Assembly (NCBI RefSeq): GCF_002113885.1
Contig: NW_018480077.1
Location: 1,659,773 to 1,723,772 of the forward strand
DNA from: Mizuhopecten yessoensis
Lineage: Eukaryota
Direction of reading: 5' to 3'
Length of the DNA stretch: 64,000 nt
Below, piece by piece: positions 2,440-53,808 of this stretch (positions are counted from its first letter, which is position 1; each line of letters begins with the position of its first letter). The position numbers were made by a program, and so were the translations under genes. The notes below the pieces were generated by a model, which did not search any database, was not told the origin of the DNA, and saw only the letters and a program-made list of their open reading frames with translations.

Positions 2440-3080
2440 TGGCATCTGATTAACCCTCTTGGCTGCGAGGTCTGAAGCGTTTGACAGATCGTGTAAGTTG
2501 TGAGGAATGAAATGTATGAATCGTTTGACAAAGCTGATTTTTCTTTGAGATACGTTTGACAAACCCGATCTTAAGTGAGGGGTAGGAAGCAGGACGGTGT
2601 GGTGTAGAGCGTTCAACAGACCCAGTTGACTGTGAGGACTCTGTGAGAGTTTGACGAATCGTGTTGGCTATGAGGACTGTAAGGTTAGAGGACTGAAAGA
2701 TTTTAGAGTTTGACGGATCCCGTCGGATATGTGAGGACTGTTGGGTTGGCGGATCCGGTCGGCTATGGGGACTGTGTAAGCGTTTAACAGACCTTTAGGG
2801 ATATGGGGGGGGCTGTACTTTTGACGGATCCCGTTTGCTATAGAGATTTTGTAAGCGTTTGACAGATCTTGTTGGATATGTGGACTGTACTTGTGATAGA
2901 TCCCGTCAGCTATGGGGACTGTGTAAGCTTTTACCAGGCCTTGTTAGATTTGGGGGACTGTACTTTTGATGGATCCCGTCAGCTTTGGGGACTGTGTAAG
3001 CTTTTAACAGACCTTGTTTGCAATGAGGACTGTACAAGATTTCGGCTTTTGGCAGATCTAGACGGCTTTGGGGACATTGA
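2440..3080. repeat. Degenerate tandem repeat
   Basis: Recurrent tttgac(a/g)gatcccgt and tatg(g/a)ggactgt motifs. Confidence 0.7.
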
Positions 3081-3256
3081 GGTCTAACTCTATCAATCTT
3101 CTGTGAGGAGTATATGTTCTGGAGGGATTGAAACCCGGTCTTCTGTAAGGAACTGGACAGACCTGTGAGAATTGCATATCAGGGTCTTTTAAAAACTGAT
3201 TGTATTTATTGTGCATTGCGGCCAGCCGAAAGAGAAAATGTCGCTTAACCAATTTT

Positions 3257-6200
3257 CTAATTCACAGTTACCTTTGAAAGTGAAAGGAAATAAAAACCAC
3301 TGACAGATATACCTCCAGACACTCGCCACTATTAAGAAGCTAACCAAACGTTATATATCTGAGTTTTATTGGCTTAGATGATGTCATTAGGCGAGACGTT
3401 ATTCCTGGTCCAAGTCAGGCTTGGCTGCCAATCCTAAAACTACGGCCAAGACTTGTATTTACAGGACATTAAAATAGTTCCTACTCCAATTTGAAAGCGT
3501 TCCTGTTGTATATGTAGTTGCCTTTGGATAGCATTGATCATGTAAATGGACGGTGTTGACGGAATGAAGACAGTTTTACGGCACAGAAACTCCAATTATA
3601 CATTACGCAGCTACATTATACATGGTCTCTCAATAAAACACATCACTAGAACGTCATTGGTCAACTGTCCACACACACAATCAAAAAAGAGGAAATTAGG
3701 TTTAGATGTACGACATGGCGAAGGAAAGCAGCCTTTAACATTGATCTACAGTCTGGGCGGTTTAATTACTGTGAGAGCCTGTTCTTCTGACCTTTCGAAC
3801 ACTGGGTCGAGGGACTTAATAATGTAACATTAATAACATTACGTCTGCGAAAGACAGTACAAGTTCTTGAGATTATTATTTTTTTCATCTCATCAAAAGT
3901 ATCTGGATGATGTAAGCACTGGGGTTGCTGCATACGTAACATCGTTGCATGCTTAATAAGAAAATCAAATCTGGTATGGTCCCTTAACAATCGATCTGCT
4001 TGCCGACCGTTGTTTCTGTGCTAGTCATTTTTCACAATGCGCTGGAACATTCTCAATTATCCACAAGAGACACATTATTTGAGAACTTTCCATTAAGACA
4101 ACTAGGCGTAAAAAAATATCAGTATTAGTTACATGAATAACGTTACAGATGAATCGGCCGACTCTGTGAGGCCAGCGGGATCAAGGGGGAGTAACCATTT
4201 GAGGAATAGGGGATCAAACCTCTGTGAATCTAGGTTCAAGTGATTTTAAGAATTTGCGACAGGCGCAGATTTAAAAAAATGATGATGGAAAGTGTATAAA
4301 TATGAATAACGGAAAGTCTGGAAGTATGAATGACGGAAAGTCTGAAAGCATTATTGACGAAAGATTGAAAGTATGATTGACGAAAGATTGAAGATATGAT
4401 TGACGAAAGATTGAAAGTATGATTGACGAAAGTTTGAAGATATGATTGACGAAAGATTGATAGTATGATAGAAAGAAAGTTCTAAGTATAACTAACCGAA
4501 AATATCTGAAAGTATGATTGATGGAAAGTCTAAAGTATGACTCAATCAATAAGCTTCATGGATGTCTGAAAGTATCATTTACTGAAAGTCTGCAGGACTG
4601 ACTGGTTGAAAGTTTGAAACTATATATATATATATATATATAATGACGGAGAAACTCGTGCAAAAATCCACAATTTCCATTATCCGACCATACTTTCTCG
4701 TTTACGTAAAGTGCCGACAGTTCCCGGTTGACTTCAAAGCAACGACGATTCGATGTAAGCAAGACATCGTAATGAAACGAAACATCAAATGAGTCAGACA
4801 AGATAGCTTGTTATACAAATACAAACTTCATTTATTTTACAATAATTATGAAACAATCAATATATAACTTTCATCTTACATTATGATAATAATTCGAGGT
4901 TCTTATATACCGCTTTATCACAAACCTAGTTCGTAGGTCGTCTCAAAGCGATTCACAAATTATTATCCGTGGTTATAGGGCCTTGACAACCAGCCAATAT
5001 ATTTATCAACTCCATTTCGGCGCTCACAGCTAGCATTCTACAATTCTAGCACTGCCCAACCACGTACTCATTTACAGCTGAGTAGACTGGAACAAGCGGA
5101 GTAAAGTATCTGGCTCAAAGATACAACACAGTGCCGTGCCGTGTCGTGACTCGAACCCGCAATCCTTCGGTCACGAGCCCGGCGTCCTACCACTAGACTA
5201 CCGTGCCTCCTATATCAACCACTCTTGTTAGCCCGGATGTTAAACTAGCGCGCAAGGGTCTTAATGTGGGAGGAAACCGGACTACCCGGAGAAAACCCAC
5301 GTGGTCAGGCAGGTCATCCCGTCTTTCACATTCGACCGTGGAATCGAACCCCGGCCGTATTGGTGACAGCCGCGTGTGTTGCTATCCACTGCGCCACCCG
5401 ACCACCACAACAGGTAGTTACACATTGGTCATTTACTTTATATTTCCTAGCGATACTATGGAGCGTGGTGCAAGTAACCCAAAGAGTGAGTCTCTAAGTT
5501 ATCTCCTGTGTTAAGAACACGTCCGACTTTCCAATATCACAAACTAGTAATTTTTAACATGATGCACTATAAAGTCAGTGAGTTTAGACAATCTTACCGC
5601 GTCTGCCTCCCAGATGTAGCCTATTACTGTCTGTGAAATTGAATTTGACTGACATTATAGCACCATGGGTTGCATAAAGAACGCGACCAGGGGAATTACG
5701 AATGACGTCACTTGTTTCATGAAGCAGACGATTTTCTAACAGGACATATGGCATCGTAAATATCAAATAATTCCTTAAATCACACTTATAAGAGACATTT
5801 TTGCAAAGATGAAAATGCCTGTGCACTTACTAAACTACATGCTTGTATTTTGATATACAATAAGTGCATGTATATATATTTATTAATTGTATATTGGGGT
5901 TAAATATGTGTATATTGACATAGATGGTTTAATTTTGTTTAGCGCTCTATTTACAGCTGAGGTAATCTTAGGGGTGCATCCATGTGTTATGTATGTGTGT
6001 TAGAGATAGGACATTTTAGTGTGTTTGCCTCCTTGCGATTGCGCGGATCTGATGCCGACTTCAGAAAGCTACCTCACTGAATACTATGCCGAAGTCACCC
6101 AACATAGTATTCCGCCTAGTCACTTTATACTGACAACGGGTTAACCAGTTGTTGCGTTATCCTAATTGATGAATAAGCAGGGAATAAGAATTGTTTAAGG

Positions 6201-9200
6201 ACTATGGTATATTAAAATAAAGTGAGTGTACGTTGACGTAGAGTAAGTGTACATTGACGTAGAGTAAGTGTACGTTGACGTAGAGTAAGTGTACATTGAC
6301 GTAGAGTAAGTGTACGTTGACGTAGAGTAAGTGTACGTTGGTGTAGATAATGTACTTTGACGTAGAGTATGTGAACGTTGACATAGAGTCAGTGAACATT
6401 GACGTAGAGTAAGTGTACGTTGACGTAGAGTAAGTGTACGTTGACGTAGATTAAGTGTACATTGACGCAGAGTAGGAAAACGTTGACATAGAGTAAGTGA
6501 ACATTGACGTAGAGGAAGTGTACGTTGACGTAGAGTAAGTGTACGTTGACGTAAAGTAAGTGTACGTTGACGTAGAGTAAGTGTACATTGACGTATAGTA
6601 AGTGTATGTTGACGTAGAGTAAGTGTACATTGACGTATAGTAAGTGTATGTTGACGTAGAGTAAGTGAACATTGGCGTAGAGTAAGTGAACATTGACGTA
6701 GATTAAGTGAACATTGACGTAGAGTAAGTGAACATTGACGTAGAGTAAGTGTACGTTGACGTAGAGTATGTGAACATTGACGTAAAGTAAGTGTACGTTG
6801 ACGTAGAGTATGTGAACATTGACGTAGAGTAAGTGTACGTTGACGTAGATTAAGTGTATGTTAACATAGAGTAAGTGTATTTTAACGTAGAGTAAGTGTA
6901 CGTTGACGTAGATTAAGTGTACATTGACGCAGAGTAGGAAAAAGTTGACATAGAGTAAGTGAACATTGACGTAGAGTAAGTGTACGTTGACGTAGAGTAA
7001 GTGTACGTTGACGTAAAGTAAGTGAACATTGACGTAGATTAAGTGAACATTGACGTAGATTAAGTGAACATTGACGTAGAGTAAGTGAACATTGACGTAA
7101 AGTAAGTGAACATTGACGTATAGTAAGTGTATGTTGACGTAGAGTAAGTGAACATTGACGTAGAGTCAGTGAACGCTGATATAGAATCAGTGAACGCTGA
7201 CGTAGAGTCAGTGAACGCTGACGTAGAGTAAATAAACATTGACGTAGAGTAAGTGTACGTTGACGTAGAGTAAGTGAATATTGACGTAGAGTAAGTGAAC
7301 ATTGACATTGACATTGACATTGTTCACTGAACATGGAGAAACAAGTGAACGCTATTGCCAAATCCTGTTACTACCAGATCAGGAACATCGGCTGTATTCG
7401 GCAGTTTTTAACTGCAGATGCATGCAAGATTTTGGTGCATTCACTTGTTACCCCTCGGTTGGATTAATTATGGTAACGCCCTGCTCTTTGGTATATCTGA
7501 CAAACTAACTAGTCGTCTGCAGAGGGTCCTGTTGACTTAGGGTAAGTGTATATGTTGACGTAGCGTAAGTGTATGTTGACATAGATTAATTGAACGTTGA
7601 CGTATAGTTAATAAGTGTGTGTTGACGCTGAGTAATAATGTAAATGATGTTTGGAAAATTAGGGGGATTTTTTGTAAATACTTTCGGTCTATTATACGAT
7701 CACGTTAGAAAGACGAGTGCATATGAAATACGCAATTGATCTATCTGTATTTCATTATTCCTTACAATCCTAAACCAATTGACAATGCAACTCTTCCAAA
7801 AGATGGCAACCAAAAACTGATATATGTTACACATGTAAAATACCTGTGAAAAGAAGGAATTATGATATGTACCATAATTGGTCTGTCTTTGTCTTCCTAT
7901 ATCAACAGTTTTCTAAAGTTCTATCAAAATGCGTTAAAAGGAGAACACATGGCGCACGACTTAAGGGAGGTAACTCTTACAAATTATGGTTACACCAGAA
8001 TTTCACCCATATATTGTTGATCCCAATTAAACATCGAAATTCTGATACGCAATTTGGGGGCATTAAACATTTGCTTTAGCTATCAAAATGGTAAAAGGCG
8101 ACGTTAACTTAGTCTGTGAAAAGGCATTAAGGACAATGTCTTCATAAAAATACATTGTAGTTAATTGTCAATCACTTTTTCGATCCAATTGAATGCTAGG
8201 AAATAAATGTTCCAGTAACATATTCTACGGCTATGTAAATGTAAAACCAATGGTCTTGTTACCGTAATGAATAGAGTAACTTTATAAAAAAGTGTCCTTT
8301 CGTAACATTTATTGTTATAAAACTAAAGATAAAATAAAACTGTTATAAACATTTAAGCACTTTTGGTTATGGTTTATAACAATCTAGGTCACTTAGCCTT
8401 CGATTTGTTATCCACAGTCTGCTAAGATATATATGAGTGGGGAATTTTACTACGATGTTTGTGGTTTCTTGTGGCAGGATCTATCTTCATTTGCGGCTTC
8501 TCCACAGCTAGTAATATAGAAATTTTTCTCCGCATGACCAATAATGAGCATTCGATGTCATTTCGTAACATTTAGTTGAGTCGCAAAATTAAAATAGCGG
8601 TGAGCTATTTCCATTAAGACATCAGCCCTAATGACCTATTATTAGGTAAACTTGGCTAGCTACCATATTAAAAACTAGCGTACATGTTCAATATATCCAC
8701 GTTACATACAAGATCTAGACTATAGCCAAAAAATAACAATTTAATCACTAGGCCCGTTAATATTTAATAACGAATACACAATGGGATCCAACCGTTTTGA
8801 TGGCGTTAAACGAAAGTATGTTTTTCGGAAATTACTTACTCTATTTTTGTAAGCGTGGACATACCTGTATTTGTTATATGGATTACGTATATCATTCATC
8901 TATTGATTACAAGCATTGGCTATTAATAAAATCAACAACTGCTAGTGCTATGTCCAAACAGCAAATTTCAAAACAAATTTTATGAACCCGCATAACTCGA
9001 ATACTCGGACAACTCGAAGTATAACGAGGTTCGACTTACATGAATTCTGATGATTGATTGGGGTCTTCAAGTACGACTTATAAATGGATAGAAAATTAGG
9101 ATAACCATATTAAACTTTTTTAAGGGCTTTTTGAACCTTAACGGCACTTGAAATAGATATAATAATATTTGTATTTCGTCTTTACGTGGCTTTACAAAAC

Positions 9201-11494
9201 ACATTTATATTGAGATTCCTGGAACCACTATGGTTAACGTAATTAAGTGCAGTAGATATTGTGGTATACAAACACCGTACCTCTAATATACCAGTGTTTT
9301 CATTCTATACCTAAATTGGTGTCTACCACTTTTACCTAATAAACCTCAATGTTGTGTGATCATCAAATGTGTGGTAATTTGAGTGATAAAGTGTTTATCG
9401 GGATTAAGAGCTATGTTAAATTCATCACTATTCCTCTCATCTCCGCAATGAAAATACAACTGAGTCGGCTCTATTTCTTAACATTGTACAAGCTATAACG
9501 TTATAGTAATTCGTTATCTGTTTTACAGGCGCATGATATCGTTATAATCATACAGCATACATGTACACCAACTGTCTGTTACTGAGTATGCGCACGTGTC
9601 CAGCTCCAAGGCTTAATAGGTTTATCATTTGCATGAAGCCAGTAAGTAATATTCAATGCACAGTTCTTACTCGCGAAAGGTATAATGTATTGAGATGCGC
9701 GGTCGGAAGGGTTTATGCAGAAAACTATAGCACTACTGTATATACACACAATCCTATGAGACACGAGAACAATCTGAGGATGACATATCCCACAGTAACA
9801 ATCACTAAATTAGAAAAGAAAATGTTGCTAACTTTCCTAAAGAATATAGCAGGATTTTGCCTCGGCATCAGAAAGCATATTTGTACCATTCAAAACACCT
9901 GGCTTTAACGAAAATGAATCTGATTTTTTTTTTTTTCATTTTTGCTTCGATTATGAAATTACCATGTCACTTTAGGGCAACATTTATATCCCCGAGACCA
10001 AACAGTCGGCCGGGAGAGAGGGGAGGGATAAAAAGGGGCAAAGATTTCCGTATTTCCTTTGTTACCCAGTCATTCTCCCAAACATCAAACTAATAACACT
10101 CTATTTTCAATTATGGATAGTATTATTATAACATAAAAATCATACAAAAATCAAACTGTAAAACTCGAAATATATGTAAACAACCTATTAACAATGTACA
10201 GATCTTTTAAACGTTGCCCATTAATAGAAACAGAGACACAAATTACAATTATATATGTCGCTGATAGAAAAGATATTGAACTATCAAAATGACTTAAAAG
10301 CATTCTAAAATTGAAGACATCGGGTTTTGTTGCCAAGATAGTTAATCATATTAGTTAATCCACGGAATTAGATTATCTAAGTCCGTGGTTAATCTCGATC
10401 AATACTCCGTAGCAATATTGGATTATGACTGATCGAGATATGGTGGGGTGCAAAACAATTTAAATTTAATCAGATGGAATAATTTTCATGCATATGCTTA
10501 AATTAATATGCTGTTATCACTGTGTACACACAAATCTATCAACCTGCAAAGTTGGCAAGAAGGGTTGATTTTGAGCGTTGTAAAAGTCCAAATTGAACGA
10601 GATATATGCTTAAGCAACATATTATTATTGATGTTGTGTAAGGAGTGAACTGAAAGCAGTTCAATAATACTTCTCATAGAAAATTCAATTACATTTAATT
10701 TATTGTTATTCAGCATTTAGTTTAAATAATGTATGTACCGTGTATGCTTGCTCAATGAATAGAACAGCCATCGCACAGGGAGGGTCAGTGGTATCCAACA
10801 ACGTAACAATTATGACGTCACAAAAATGATGACGTCAACACTCCGGTCCATGGCATTCATAGCTCAAATGAATGTCAACCGAATTTGGTAGGGTTATATA
10901 GTGGCAATGCCATACGATGGTAAATATTTGATTTTCTATCTATATAAAGATGCATTCGGTACCTTACCTGATATGAGCCTATACTACTACCCTCGTCAAG
11001 GAAGCTAAAATAAATAAACAAATAAATAAATAACAGAGAAATGCAGACTTTTATCCATGCAAAGTTTTCAACAACCTTACAAATGTAAATAATTTGACTG
11101 ACATTACAGTATTGAAAAAGAAATGACATGTCAATTTTCAGATTTAATTATGACATCACCTTGACACGCTGGAAGATGTGTATTGTTAGAGTTATCTGTC
11201 TTGAATGGCGTAAGTGAGGTGACGTCACGTCCACTTGCCACGGCGAACGAGAACTACTTTTCATCCTATAAATAAATACACATTATTGAATAAAAGACTA
11301 AAACTTGTATGATTGATTCGCAATCAATTCGCTTTTGTATATTTATGTTGAATTTTTAACATGGAATGTTTCAAATCTTTCTATATTGAAAACCGGTCAA
11401 TTGATTTTCGGGTTTATTTTCTTACAGCGGAGGAAGTTGATAAGTCTCTTAGGAAGCCATATTGAAGACATATGACGATATGTTACCTGTCCAT
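3257..11494 (-). CDS. Hypothetical 5-exon micro-gene, 56 aa (or a spliced lncRNA / 5'UTR)
   Basis: Exons 11494-11487, 11004-10968, 7843-7766, 5630-5598, 3271-3257, all joined by GT-AG introns, give a stop-free MDSFLDEGSSIGSYQVFYMCNIYQFLVAIFWKSCIVNWFRITVIGYIWEADAVTVN*. No homology recognised. Confidence 0.33.
4300..4642. repeat. Degenerate ~23-bp minisatellite ending in (TA)n
   Basis: Repeated gattgacgaaagattgaaagtat; TA run at ~4620-4642. Confidence 0.8.
4831..5406 (-). mobile_element. V-domain tRNA-derived SINE, interrupted by a second SINE
   Basis: Head GGTGGTCGGGTGGCGCAGTGG...GGTTCGATTCC (A/B boxes) and V-domain GTGGGTTTTCTCCGGGTAGTCCGGTTTCCTCCCACA. Tail at 4835-4856 matches the copy at 12281-12507. 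Confidence 0.85.
4886..5210 (-). mobile_element. tRNA-derived SINE with CORE/Nin-like centre and L2-like tail (copy 1)
   Basis: Head GGAGGCACGGTAGTCTAGTGG...GGTTCGAGTC, centre TGTATCTTTGAGCCAGATACTTTAC...CAGCTGTAAATGAGTAC, tail AAAGCGGTATATAAG...(TTA)n. Closely similar copy at 50427-50774. Confidence 0.88.
6025..6210 (-). mobile_element. Meta-domain SINE fragment
   Basis: Minus-strand ACTGGTTAACCCGTTGTCAGTATAAAGTGACTAGGCGG resembles the MetaSINE central domain. Confidence 0.6.
6220..7640. repeat. 21-bp minisatellite (~50 units), interrupted by a LINE fragment
   Basis: Unit TTGACGTAGAGTAAGTG(T/A)AC(G/A); degenerate units resume at ~7530-7640. Confidence 0.95.
7322..7529 (+). mobile_element. 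L2/CR1-group LINE ORF2 fragment (RT thumb region), frameshifted
   Basis: MEKQVNAIAKSCYYQIRNIGCIRQFLTADACKILVHSLVTPRLD, then a 4-nt insertion, then YGNALLFGISDKLTSRLQRV. Matches the L2-type 'LRNI..IR..L...SRLDY.N.LL.G...LQ.VQN' pattern. Confidence 0.85.
10361..10387. mobile_element. 27-bp palindromic mini-element with 7-bp TSD (copy 1)
   Basis: GTTAATC [CACGGAATTAGATTATCTAAGTCCGTG] GTTAATC. Confidence 0.7.
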
Positions 11495-53118: not shown

Positions 53119-53808
53119 TTGTATAACTAACTCGGTAAGCAAGAAAAAAAACTATCGATGTTAGCACGGACTTAGATAATACTCTAATTCCGTGATGTTA
53201 GTAACCAGTGCGGCCTAACCGGTGTGCTTCTTGTGTAATGTTTTGTTTACAGATTGTTGTGCACGGAATTGTACCTTCAACTTCGACCTGCCACGCCCCA
53301 GTTTTAGCTGAGCCAGCACGAATTTAATTTGTGCACGCTCGATCCTTAATTTTTTTTACACAAAGAGGTCTTCGTTTTGAAATTTGTAATGGATCCCAAT
53401 AGTGTCAACATAATATATAGAAAGTTTAATTAACAGAGAGCAAAAAAAAAATAGACGATTCTTCGCTTCCGATTTTGTGAGATTAGGGATGCAATCCGTG
53501 TCGTTATTTTTCTTATAATTCGAAACTGTGGCAATATCAAATATATATTTACTTTCGATGTTTATGCTTTTCTGTGAAATAATGTTACTATGATTCAAAA
53601 GGTGCGATAAATGACTCTGATTGTGCTTATATCAAAAACAGTAATGAACAATAATTTCATCACCCTTCAACAAAAATACGAAAATAAAAAGTAGCTTTAT
53701 CTGGAACCAAAATGATGTCGAAGCCGCTTGGAAGCAGCCTCTCCGTACTTGTTTGACAAGATTCACATAGTAATCTAATGAAAAGGAAGCCATAAATAAC
53801 GTAATAAG
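53119..53808. promoter_or_regulatory. Putative bidirectional promoter and 5'UTRs between SDR39U1 and AMFR
   Basis: Divergent start codons 690 bp apart; CpG-containing; CCACGCCC (Sp/KLF) box at ~53292. Confidence 0.7.
53165..53194. mobile_element. 30-bp palindromic mini-element with 7-bp TSD (copy 2)
   Basis: ATGTTAG [CACGGACTTAGATAATACTCTAATTCCGTG] ATGTTAG. Confidence 0.7.

What the first reader, a model, noticed from the sequence alone, without database searches (positions are those of the whole stretch)
10354..10394. Ultra-short (27-30 bp) palindromic mobile element with 7-bp target-site duplications
Seen: CACGGAATTAGATTATCTAAGTCCGTG (10361-10387) is flanked by the perfect direct repeat GTTAATC. 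Its reverse complement, with a 3-nt insertion, recurs 43 kb away (53165-53194), flanked by a different perfect 7-bp repeat, ATGTTAG. The same insert with different TSDs of equal length is the signature of independent transposase-mediated insertions. The element is little more than two ~12-bp TIRs. Known: 7-8 bp TSDs with 5'-CA ends are typical of the P-element superfamily, and typical MITEs are much longer. Inference: a minimal TIR-only transposon, or a stereotyped internal-deletion scar of a P-like element, short enough for repeat annotators to miss.
Basis: partly seen in the sequence, partly recalled or inferred. Interest (0 to 1): 0.72.

Follow-up and report, generated by a model that had tools for sequence, protein, structure and literature searches.

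The report
Excision scars of a P-type transposon
The two tiny palindromes are almost certainly repair scars left where a P-element-like jumping gene cut itself out; over 1,200 such scars in this animal genome point to the same 17-base staggered cut known from the fruit-fly P element.

Summary
Window 10361-10387 (27 bp) and 53165-53194 (30 bp) are the same insert in opposite orientation. Each is flanked by a different perfect 7-bp duplication.

Most likely they are not mobile elements. They look like excision footprints of a cut-and-paste transposon family with two distinguishable ends, CACGGACTTAGATAACA ("C-end") and CACGGAATTAGATTAGA ("A-end").

- **Abundance:** the genome holds 1,264 short copies (24-54 bp) with perfect 12-nt ends, against 0 in the control.
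- **What varies:** copies differ only at the central junction. A sample of 100 shows about 40 junction types, and the 27-mer makes up 32%.
- **What is kept:** each end retains at most 17 nt. Joins show 0-3 nt microhomology, short fillers or templated fillers.
- **Parents:** elements of 1.9-5.6 kb with the same ends and 7-bp duplications exist. One copy with the same A-end carries a degraded P-type transposase, with RNase H and GTP-binding insertion domains.
- **Target:** TNN-GTNNNAC-NNA, a Galileo/1360-like core.

The headline "ultra-short mobile element" is not.

Two earlier notes of this scan, on other DNA of this genome, reached the same reading for other families. This is a new member of a known kind and of moderate interest.

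The parts
10354..10360 (.). Left copy of the 7-bp target-site duplication GTTAATC (site 1)
   Evidence: identical to 10388-10394
10361..10375 (+). Retained tip of the A-end TIR, 15 nt (CACGGAATTAGATTA). The last 3 nt (TTA, 10373-10375) are the junction microhomology shared with the C-end tip.
   Evidence: parent A-end sequence
10373..10387 (-). Retained tip of the C-end TIR, 15 nt (CACGGACTTAGATAA read on the minus strand)
   Evidence: parent C-end sequence
10388..10394 (.). Right copy of the target-site duplication GTTAATC (site 1)
53158..53164 (.). Left copy of the 7-bp target-site duplication ATGTTAG (site 2)
   Evidence: It fits the target logo, with T three bases upstream and A three bases downstream.
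53165..53179 (+). Retained tip of the C-end TIR, 15 nt
53180..53182 (.). 3-nt junction filler (TAC) that belongs to neither end
53183..53194 (-). Retained tip of the A-end TIR, 12 nt
53195..53201 (.). Right copy of the target-site duplication ATGTTAG (site 2)

Best explanation
Both window sites are excision footprints of a P-superfamily cut-and-paste transposon.

**Proposed sequence of events**
1. The element has about 29-bp imperfect TIRs, an A-end and a C-end. It inserted at each site and duplicated 7 bp of a palindromic target (TNN-GTNNNAC-NNA).
2. Its transposase later cut it out with a cut staggered by about 17 nt inside each end. The donor flanks therefore kept the TSD plus a 17-nt 3' tail of each TIR.
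3. The two tails are nearly identical rather than complementary. Host end joining trimmed and joined them.
4. Site 1 was joined through a 3-nt microhomology, giving the commonest product, the 27-mer. Site 2 was joined with a 3-nt filler, giving the 30-mer.

**Shown**
- The family and its two distinguishable ends.
- The 7-bp TSDs and the target logo.
- Long parents with the same ends.
- A linked P-type transposase.
- The 17-nt ceiling and the junction spectrum.

**Inferred**
- The staggered cleavage itself.
- The repair pathway.
For: **1. Abundance.** 1,264 short copies against 0 in the control. Pile-up depth at 10338-10404 is about 900-1,700 times the flanking depth in four individuals.

**2. 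Junction variation.** Copies differ only at the centre. In the first 100 of the census I count 32 canonical 27-mers and about 40 other junction types of 24-48 bp.

**3. Retained length.** Among 61 copies read with flanks, retained length stops at 17 nt: 18 copies at the C-end and 25 at the A-end, with only 1 longer on each side. Joins are a 3-nt microhomology (15 copies), a 1-nt microhomology (15), blunt (6) or fillers of 1-42 nt (25).

**4. Two different ends.** 59 of the 61 copies carry one C-end and one A-end, as expected for the two different ends of one parent.

**5. Templated filler.** One 14-nt filler is an exact copy of flanking sequence 84 bp away.

**6. Long parents exist.**
- 62 C-ends and 70 A-ends match 25-nt TIR patterns, against 0 in the controls.
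- A 4,692-bp non-coding element has the TSD GTCAAAC.
- 8 of 10 further elements of 1.9-5.6 kb have perfect 7-bp TSDs.
- Some copies are 99% identical.

**7. Linked transposase.** Contig C2226 (L095) has the A-end, then 972 bp that are 96% identical to the non-autonomous element. Downstream lie open frames with PF21787 and PF21788. They match the Drosophila P transposase 6p5a at E = 2.9e-9.

**8. Match to experiment.**
- The 17-nt stagger is the known peculiarity of P transposase (PMC7776569).
- Sequenced P{wa} excision junctions in flies show the same picture: TSD, up to 17 nt of each end, 1-3 nt microhomologies, small and templated insertions, and one dominant junction (PMC2895639).

**9. Target.** The palindromic logo with a GT...AC core resembles Galileo's GTANTAC (PMC4168063).
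Against: - No polymorphic site was caught with the element still in place. Site 1 carries the scar in all three individuals whose contigs cover it.
- The share of one junction type (32%) is high.
- Some 27-mers share flanks, so they are copies of one scar inside another repeat. This inflates the counts.
- A few copies keep 18-22 nt of an end.
- The common 35-mer has a constant extra base (17+1+17) that I cannot explain.
- The transposase-bearing copy is frameshifted and runs into an assembly gap. Its C-end was not seen and no THAP domain was found.
- My 61-copy sample was drawn with three different search patterns and is not unbiased. However, the ceiling also holds in the unbiased list, where about 5 of 100 exceed 17 nt.
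Confidence: 0.9

Rival explanations
1. The 27-35-bp units are themselves mobile. On this reading they are minimal TIR-only non-autonomous transposons, mobilised in trans and amplified to hundreds of copies.
For: - Hundreds of identical 27-mers sit at different sites with different 7-bp TSDs.
- Both terminal 12-mers are intact.
- One sequence makes up 32% of the copies.
Against: - Variation is by central indels and fillers with a hard 17-nt ceiling on each side, not by point-mutation subfamilies.
- One filler is templated from the flank.
- With a 17-nt stagger at both ends, a unit of 34 bp or less yields no double-stranded excised product (inference from geometry).
- Drosophila P transposase binds internal sites beyond the TIR tips (PMC7776569).
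- An experimental P excision likewise gives one dominant junction.
Confidence: 0.06
2. The short units arose mainly by interrupted gap repair (internal deletion during synthesis-dependent strand annealing), not by direct joining of the staggered tails.
For: - Deletion derivatives do exist. L049:84-1517 joins 12 nt of the A-end to the last 1.42 kb of the parent.
- A 74-bp copy has a 42-nt interior.
Against: - Sizes are not continuous. 98 of the first 100 census copies are 38 bp or shorter, and the long elements start at about 1.4 kb.
- Retained ends pile up exactly at 17 nt.
Confidence: 0.03
3. The palindrome is a conserved protein-binding or regulatory site, unrelated to transposition.
For: It is a near-perfect palindrome repeated many times.
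Against: - Flanking 7-bp duplications of different sequence occur at 52 of 61 copies with at most 1 mismatch.
- The same ends bound kilobase elements.
- The centre of the unit is variable.
Confidence: 0.01

Closest known systems
Excision footprints of the Drosophila P element (for example P{wa} repair junctions; PMC2895639)
   Same: - Both TSD copies are kept.
- Up to 17 nt of each TIR tip is kept.
- Joins use 1-3 nt microhomologies, small insertions or templated insertions.
- One junction type dominates.
   Different: - The TSD is 7 bp here, not 8 bp.
- The TIR sequence is different.
- These are natural, fixed, germline scars accumulated in over a thousand copies in a non-insect genome, not laboratory events.
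Galileo and 1360 (P superfamily, Drosophila)
   Same: - 7-bp TSD with a palindromic GT...AC core (GTANTAC in Galileo; PMC4168063).
- P-type transposase.
- Internally repetitive non-autonomous copies.
   Different: - TIRs here are short, about 29 bp, not hundreds of bases.
- The flanking target positions differ (T at -3 and A at +3 here, against AANGT/ACNTT).
- The host is a different phylum.
Zebrafish Pdre2 / THAP9 elements
   Same: P-type transposase outside insects, with short TIRs and internally deleted copies (PMC10983969).
   Different: Pdre2 has 8-bp TSDs and 13-bp TIRs of unrelated sequence. The parts of that paper I read do not describe a genome-wide population of scars.
MITEs (miniature inverted-repeat elements)
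   Same: Short, with TIRs and TSDs, and in high copy number.
   Different: MITEs are usually 100 bp or longer, carry a homogeneous interior and are themselves mobilised. Here there is no interior, and the centre behaves as a repair junction.

Membership tests
P superfamily of DNA transposons (parent element) | Transposase with an RNase H-like catalytic domain interrupted by a GTP-binding insertion domain | tested here: met
   L095:2890-4776 and 4743-5489 hit PF21787 (E = 2.5e-8 and 2.6e-14) and PF21788 (E = 1.3e-21), all above the curated cut-offs. They match the Drosophila P transposase 6p5a at E = 2.9e-9. The copy shares its A-end and 972 bp with the non-autonomous family.
P superfamily of DNA transposons (parent element) | N-terminal THAP zinc-finger DNA-binding domain | tested here: inconclusive
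   There is no THAP hit in the open frames upstream of the RNase H domain, even at E up to 5. PF12017 gave no hit in the genome. The only copy read is frameshifted, may contain introns and runs into a gap.
P superfamily of DNA transposons (parent element) | 7-8 bp target-site duplication with a palindromic target preference | tested here: met
   The register is exactly 7 bp. The logo is T-N-N-[G/A T N N N A C]-N-N-A. Of 12 long elements, 10 have perfect TSDs.
P superfamily of DNA transposons (parent element) | Terminal inverted repeats | tested here: met
   The TIRs are about 29 bp and imperfect. The A-end has 70 hits and the C-end 62 hits, against 0 in the controls.
P superfamily of DNA transposons (parent element) | Cleavage staggered by 17 nt inside each end | tested here: met
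   The evidence is indirect: retained tips stop at 17 nt on both sides. Direct mapping of the cut is not possible with these tools.
P superfamily of DNA transposons (parent element) | GTP requirement for transposition | not testable with these tools
   This needs biochemistry.
Transposon excision footprint | Both TSD copies retained, with only terminal bases of the element between them | tested here: met
Transposon excision footprint | Junction heterogeneity typical of end joining (microhomology, blunt joins, fillers, templated insertions) | tested here: met
   compared with PMC2895639.
Transposon excision footprint | Intact elements with the same ends exist in the genome | tested here: met
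Transposon excision footprint | Some sites are polymorphic between an occupied allele and a scar allele | tested here: inconclusive
   Only site 1 was examined. The scar is present in the three individuals whose contigs cover it, and neither an occupied nor an empty allele was seen.
MITE (self-mobile miniature element) | Homogeneous length and interior, with variation mainly by point substitutions | tested here: not met
   About 40 length and junction types occur among 100 copies, and there is no interior beyond the two tips.

The most novel reading that the evidence does not exclude
The canonical 27-mer, and perhaps the 35-mer, may be more than a scar. It could be re-mobilised by the P-type transposase. 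That would make it the shortest known eukaryotic transposable unit and would imply that this transposase needs nothing beyond about 13 terminal bases on each side.
Probability: 0.05. Interest if true: 0.75.

Novelty: new member of a known kind. Interest (0 to 1): 0.4.

Why it matters
- **Conservation of the mechanism.** If the scar reading holds, it points to the odd 17-nt staggered cut of the fly P transposase being shared by a distant P-type transposase. The host is coded; it may be a scallop, but that rests only on my recollection and an earlier unchecked note of this scan, and I did not test it.
- **A natural record of repair.** Over a thousand germline end-joining junctions formed at one defined break structure give a readable spectrum of microhomology use, fillers and templated insertions in a non-model animal.
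- **Transposition history.** Scars outnumber surviving elements by roughly 20 to 1 and cluster locally, which records past jumps that ordinary repeat annotation misses.
- **Annotation.** Such 24-40-bp palindromes with TSDs should be filed as footprints, not as new mobile elements or regulatory motifs.

Tried and rejected
- **PF12017 (Tnp_P_element).** No hit in the genome. The family also rang in none of the 14 control genomes, so this says little.
- **Best PF21787 hit, C5526 (L094).** There are no CACGG-type ends within 6.5 kb, and its "1,077-aa frame" is an artefact of an N gap. It is a different P-like lineage, 69% identical over the queried stretch.
- **C76738.** A C-end lies 3 kb from a P-like hit, but its orientation places that gene outside the element. 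I rejected it as a link.
- **L082.** It looked like a long element with the A-end, but it is probably a one-sided scar: the A-end tip is followed directly by a near-copy of the TSD.
- **L049 1,434-bp unit.** I first took it for the parent. It is a deletion derivative of the 4.7-kb element.
- **Reads from four individuals at site 1.** No occupied or empty allele was seen.
- **Literature search for the terminal 12-mers.** Only chance primer matches turned up.

Full report
**1. Observation**

Both sites are exactly as described.
- Site 1: GTTAATC at 10354-10360, the 27-bp insert at 10361-10387, and GTTAATC again at 10388-10394.
- Site 2: ATGTTAG at 53158-53164, the 30-bp insert at 53165-53194, and ATGTTAG again at 53195-53201.
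- The 30-mer is the reverse complement of the 27-mer with three extra central bases.

The window belongs to a 988-Mb assembly of 82,659 contigs.

**2. A very large family of short copies**

- The 16-nt pattern CACGGAMTTAGATWAT hits 688 + 696 times, against 2 + 1 for the reversed control.
- The census pattern is CACGGACTTAGA, then 0-30 bases, then TCTAATTCCGTG. It gives 658 + 606 = 1,264 hits against 0.
- Contigs of four other individuals pile up over 10338-10404 at roughly 900-1,700 times the flanking depth.

I read 61 distinct short copies with their flanks.
- 38 have a perfect 7-bp flanking repeat, 14 have one mismatch, and the rest have more.
- The neighbouring 7 bp never match better than 3 mismatches.
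- Only the 7-bp register works.
- The duplicated sites share a palindromic logo, T-N-N-[G/A T N N N A C]-N-N-A. This indicates real transposase-mediated integrations.
- 59 of the 61 copies carry one "C-end" (CACGGAC...) and one "A-end" (CACGGAA...).

**3. The short copies behave like repair junctions, not like a MITE family**

In the first 100 census hits I count 32 canonical 27-mers. The rest fall into about 40 other types of 24-48 bp, for example a 31-mer six times, a 29-mer five times and a 35-mer four times. The termini are constant and only the centre differs.

Measured against the parental TIRs (section 4), the retained length stops at 17 nt.
- 18 of 61 copies keep exactly 17 nt of the C-end and 25 of 61 keep exactly 17 nt of the A-end.
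- Only one copy on each side keeps more.
- By my manual count, about 5 of the 100 unbiased census copies exceed 17 nt.

The joins are of these kinds:

| Join type | Copies |
|---|---|
| 3-nt microhomology (the 27-mer: 15 + 15 - 3) | 15 |
| 1-nt microhomology | 15 |
| Blunt | 6 |
| Fillers of 1-42 nt | 25 |

- Site 1 is the 3-nt microhomology product.
- Site 2 is 15 nt of the C-end, a 3-nt filler and 12 nt of the A-end.
- The 35-mer is 17 + 1 + 17.

One 48-bp copy (L090) has a 14-nt filler that exactly copies sequence 84 bp downstream. It is also an inverted copy of the adjacent flank. That flank is itself a scar of a second family with CAGAGACGT ends, so a more complex history cannot be excluded there.

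**4. The parents**

A 25-nt C-end pattern has 62 hits and a 25-nt A-end pattern has 70 hits, each allowing up to 2 mismatches, against 0 in the controls. They pair on the same contigs, in the right orientation, at 1.4-9 kb.

- C5425:206923-211614 is a 4,692-bp element with the TSD GTCAAAC. It has no open frame of 90 aa or more (the longest is 87 aa) and carries 425-bp internal tandem repeats.
- Of ten further pairs of 1.9-5.6 kb, eight have perfect 7-bp TSDs and one has a single mismatch.
- Several copies are 99% identical, which suggests recent activity.
- L049:84-1517 is a deletion derivative. It joins 12 nt of the A-end to the last 1.42 kb and has the TSD GTTTTAC.

Most long A-ends read CACGGAATTAGATTAGAGGG. 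This explains the A-end tips in the scars, and also the occasional "CCC" or "GGG" beyond position 17.

**5. The transposase**

The genome has 25 matches to PF21787, the RNase H N-terminal domain of P-type transposases.

On contig C2226 (L095) an A-end lies at position 67.
- The next 972 bp are 96% identical to the 4.7-kb element. Further collinear patches reach the start of the coding region.
- Open frames at 2890-4776 and 4743-5489 carry PF21787, split by a frameshift, and PF21788, the GTP-binding insertion domain.
- They match the solved Drosophila P transposase 6p5a at E = 2.9e-9.

This copy is defective.
- The frame is broken after 5489, and an N gap starts at 6440, so its C-end is unseen.
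- No THAP domain was detected.
- Fragments of the same transposase, 90-91% identical and with stops, lie on C4672 and C660. Other P-like lineages are 59-69% identical.

**6. Mechanism**

[quoted passage not shown] Each donor flank therefore keeps the TSD plus a 17-nt 3' tail of TIR sequence.

Sequenced P{wa} excision junctions in flies (PMC2895639) show exactly what is seen here:
- the TSD and up to 17 nt of each end;
- 1-3 nt microhomologies and small insertions;
- templated insertions linked there to polymerase theta;
- one junction recovered far more often than the others.

I therefore read the scars as end-joined donor sites. The cleavage geometry and the repair pathway are inferred, not shown.

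One geometric point argues against self-mobility. If the cut is 17 nt inside each end, the two excised strands of a unit of 34 bp or less would not overlap, so no duplex could be moved.

**7. Clustering**

In the first 100 census hits at least nine pairs lie within 5 kb of each other. Most pairs have different junction types, for example three on C101 within 2.3 kb. About 0.6 pairs are expected for 1,264 random sites in 988 Mb (my count and arithmetic). This fits local hopping, which is reported for P elements. The two window sites, 43 kb apart, fit the same tendency weakly.

**8. Comparison with known families**

- The 7-bp TSD with a GT...AC core matches Galileo and 1360 of the P superfamily (GTANTAC; PMC4168063). 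It differs from the 8-bp TSD of the canonical P element and of zebrafish Pdre2.
- The TIRs are short, unlike Galileo's.
- The terminal 12-mers appear in no paper of the library except as chance primer matches.

**9. Earlier notes of this scan**

Two notes on other DNA of the same genome (s1-515148, s1-517151) reached the same reading for other P-like families and quote a 17-19-nt stagger. I found them after my own analysis. They agree with it, but they are not independent evidence.

**10. What remains open**

- No occupied or empty allele was seen at site 1 in three individuals, and site 2 was not examined.
- Some 27-mers share flanks (the TSD GCCAAAC at four or more loci). They are copies of one scar inside another repeat, so counts of independent events are lower than raw counts.
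- The constant extra base of the 35-mer, the few tips of 18-22 nt and the 32% share of one junction are not fully explained.
- The host organism is coded. I did not test its identity.

**11. Verdict**

It is best explained as excision scars of a new P-superfamily family (confidence 0.9). This is a new member of a known kind, of moderate interest.

Noticed in passing
window 10673-10940: A repeat of about 270 bp, some 300 bp downstream of site 1, has very high copy number. Contigs from four individuals pile up to thousands of times the flanking depth and show many internal joints.
   Followed up: no
window 6252-7237: There is a long tandem array with a 21-bp period (units like CATTGACGTAGAGTAAGTGAA). 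It appeared as weak pattern hits.
   Followed up: no
L090:1540-1620 (C657, near 711.45 kb): Scars of a second P-like family with CAGAGACGT ends lie directly beside a CACGG-family scar. An 18-bp tandem duplication spans the junction.
   Followed up: partly
C101:471853-476156 (L037, L038, L039, L063, L064): Five scars of different junction types lie within 4.3 kb. This may be a local-hopping trail or a strong insertion hotspot.
   Followed up: partly
L001, L004, L006, L030: The same 27-bp scar, with the same TSD (GCCAAAC) and the same flanks, occurs at four or more loci. One scar was apparently carried along when another repeat amplified.
   Followed up: partly
C5425:206923-211614 (L093 + L092 + L091): The 4.7-kb non-autonomous element contains four to five internal tandem repeats of 425 bp. 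This recalls the internally repetitive Galileo/Foldback-like structure.
   Followed up: partly
C5526:67000-73500 (L094) and C5342:71194-72144: Other P-type transposase lineages, 67-69% identical over the queried stretch to the one studied, are present without CACGG-type ends nearby. The genome has at least 25 PF21787 matches.
   Followed up: partly
window 10341-10360: The target of site 1 already held AGTTAATC twice, 13 bp apart, so GTTAATC now occurs three times within 54 bp.
   Followed up: no
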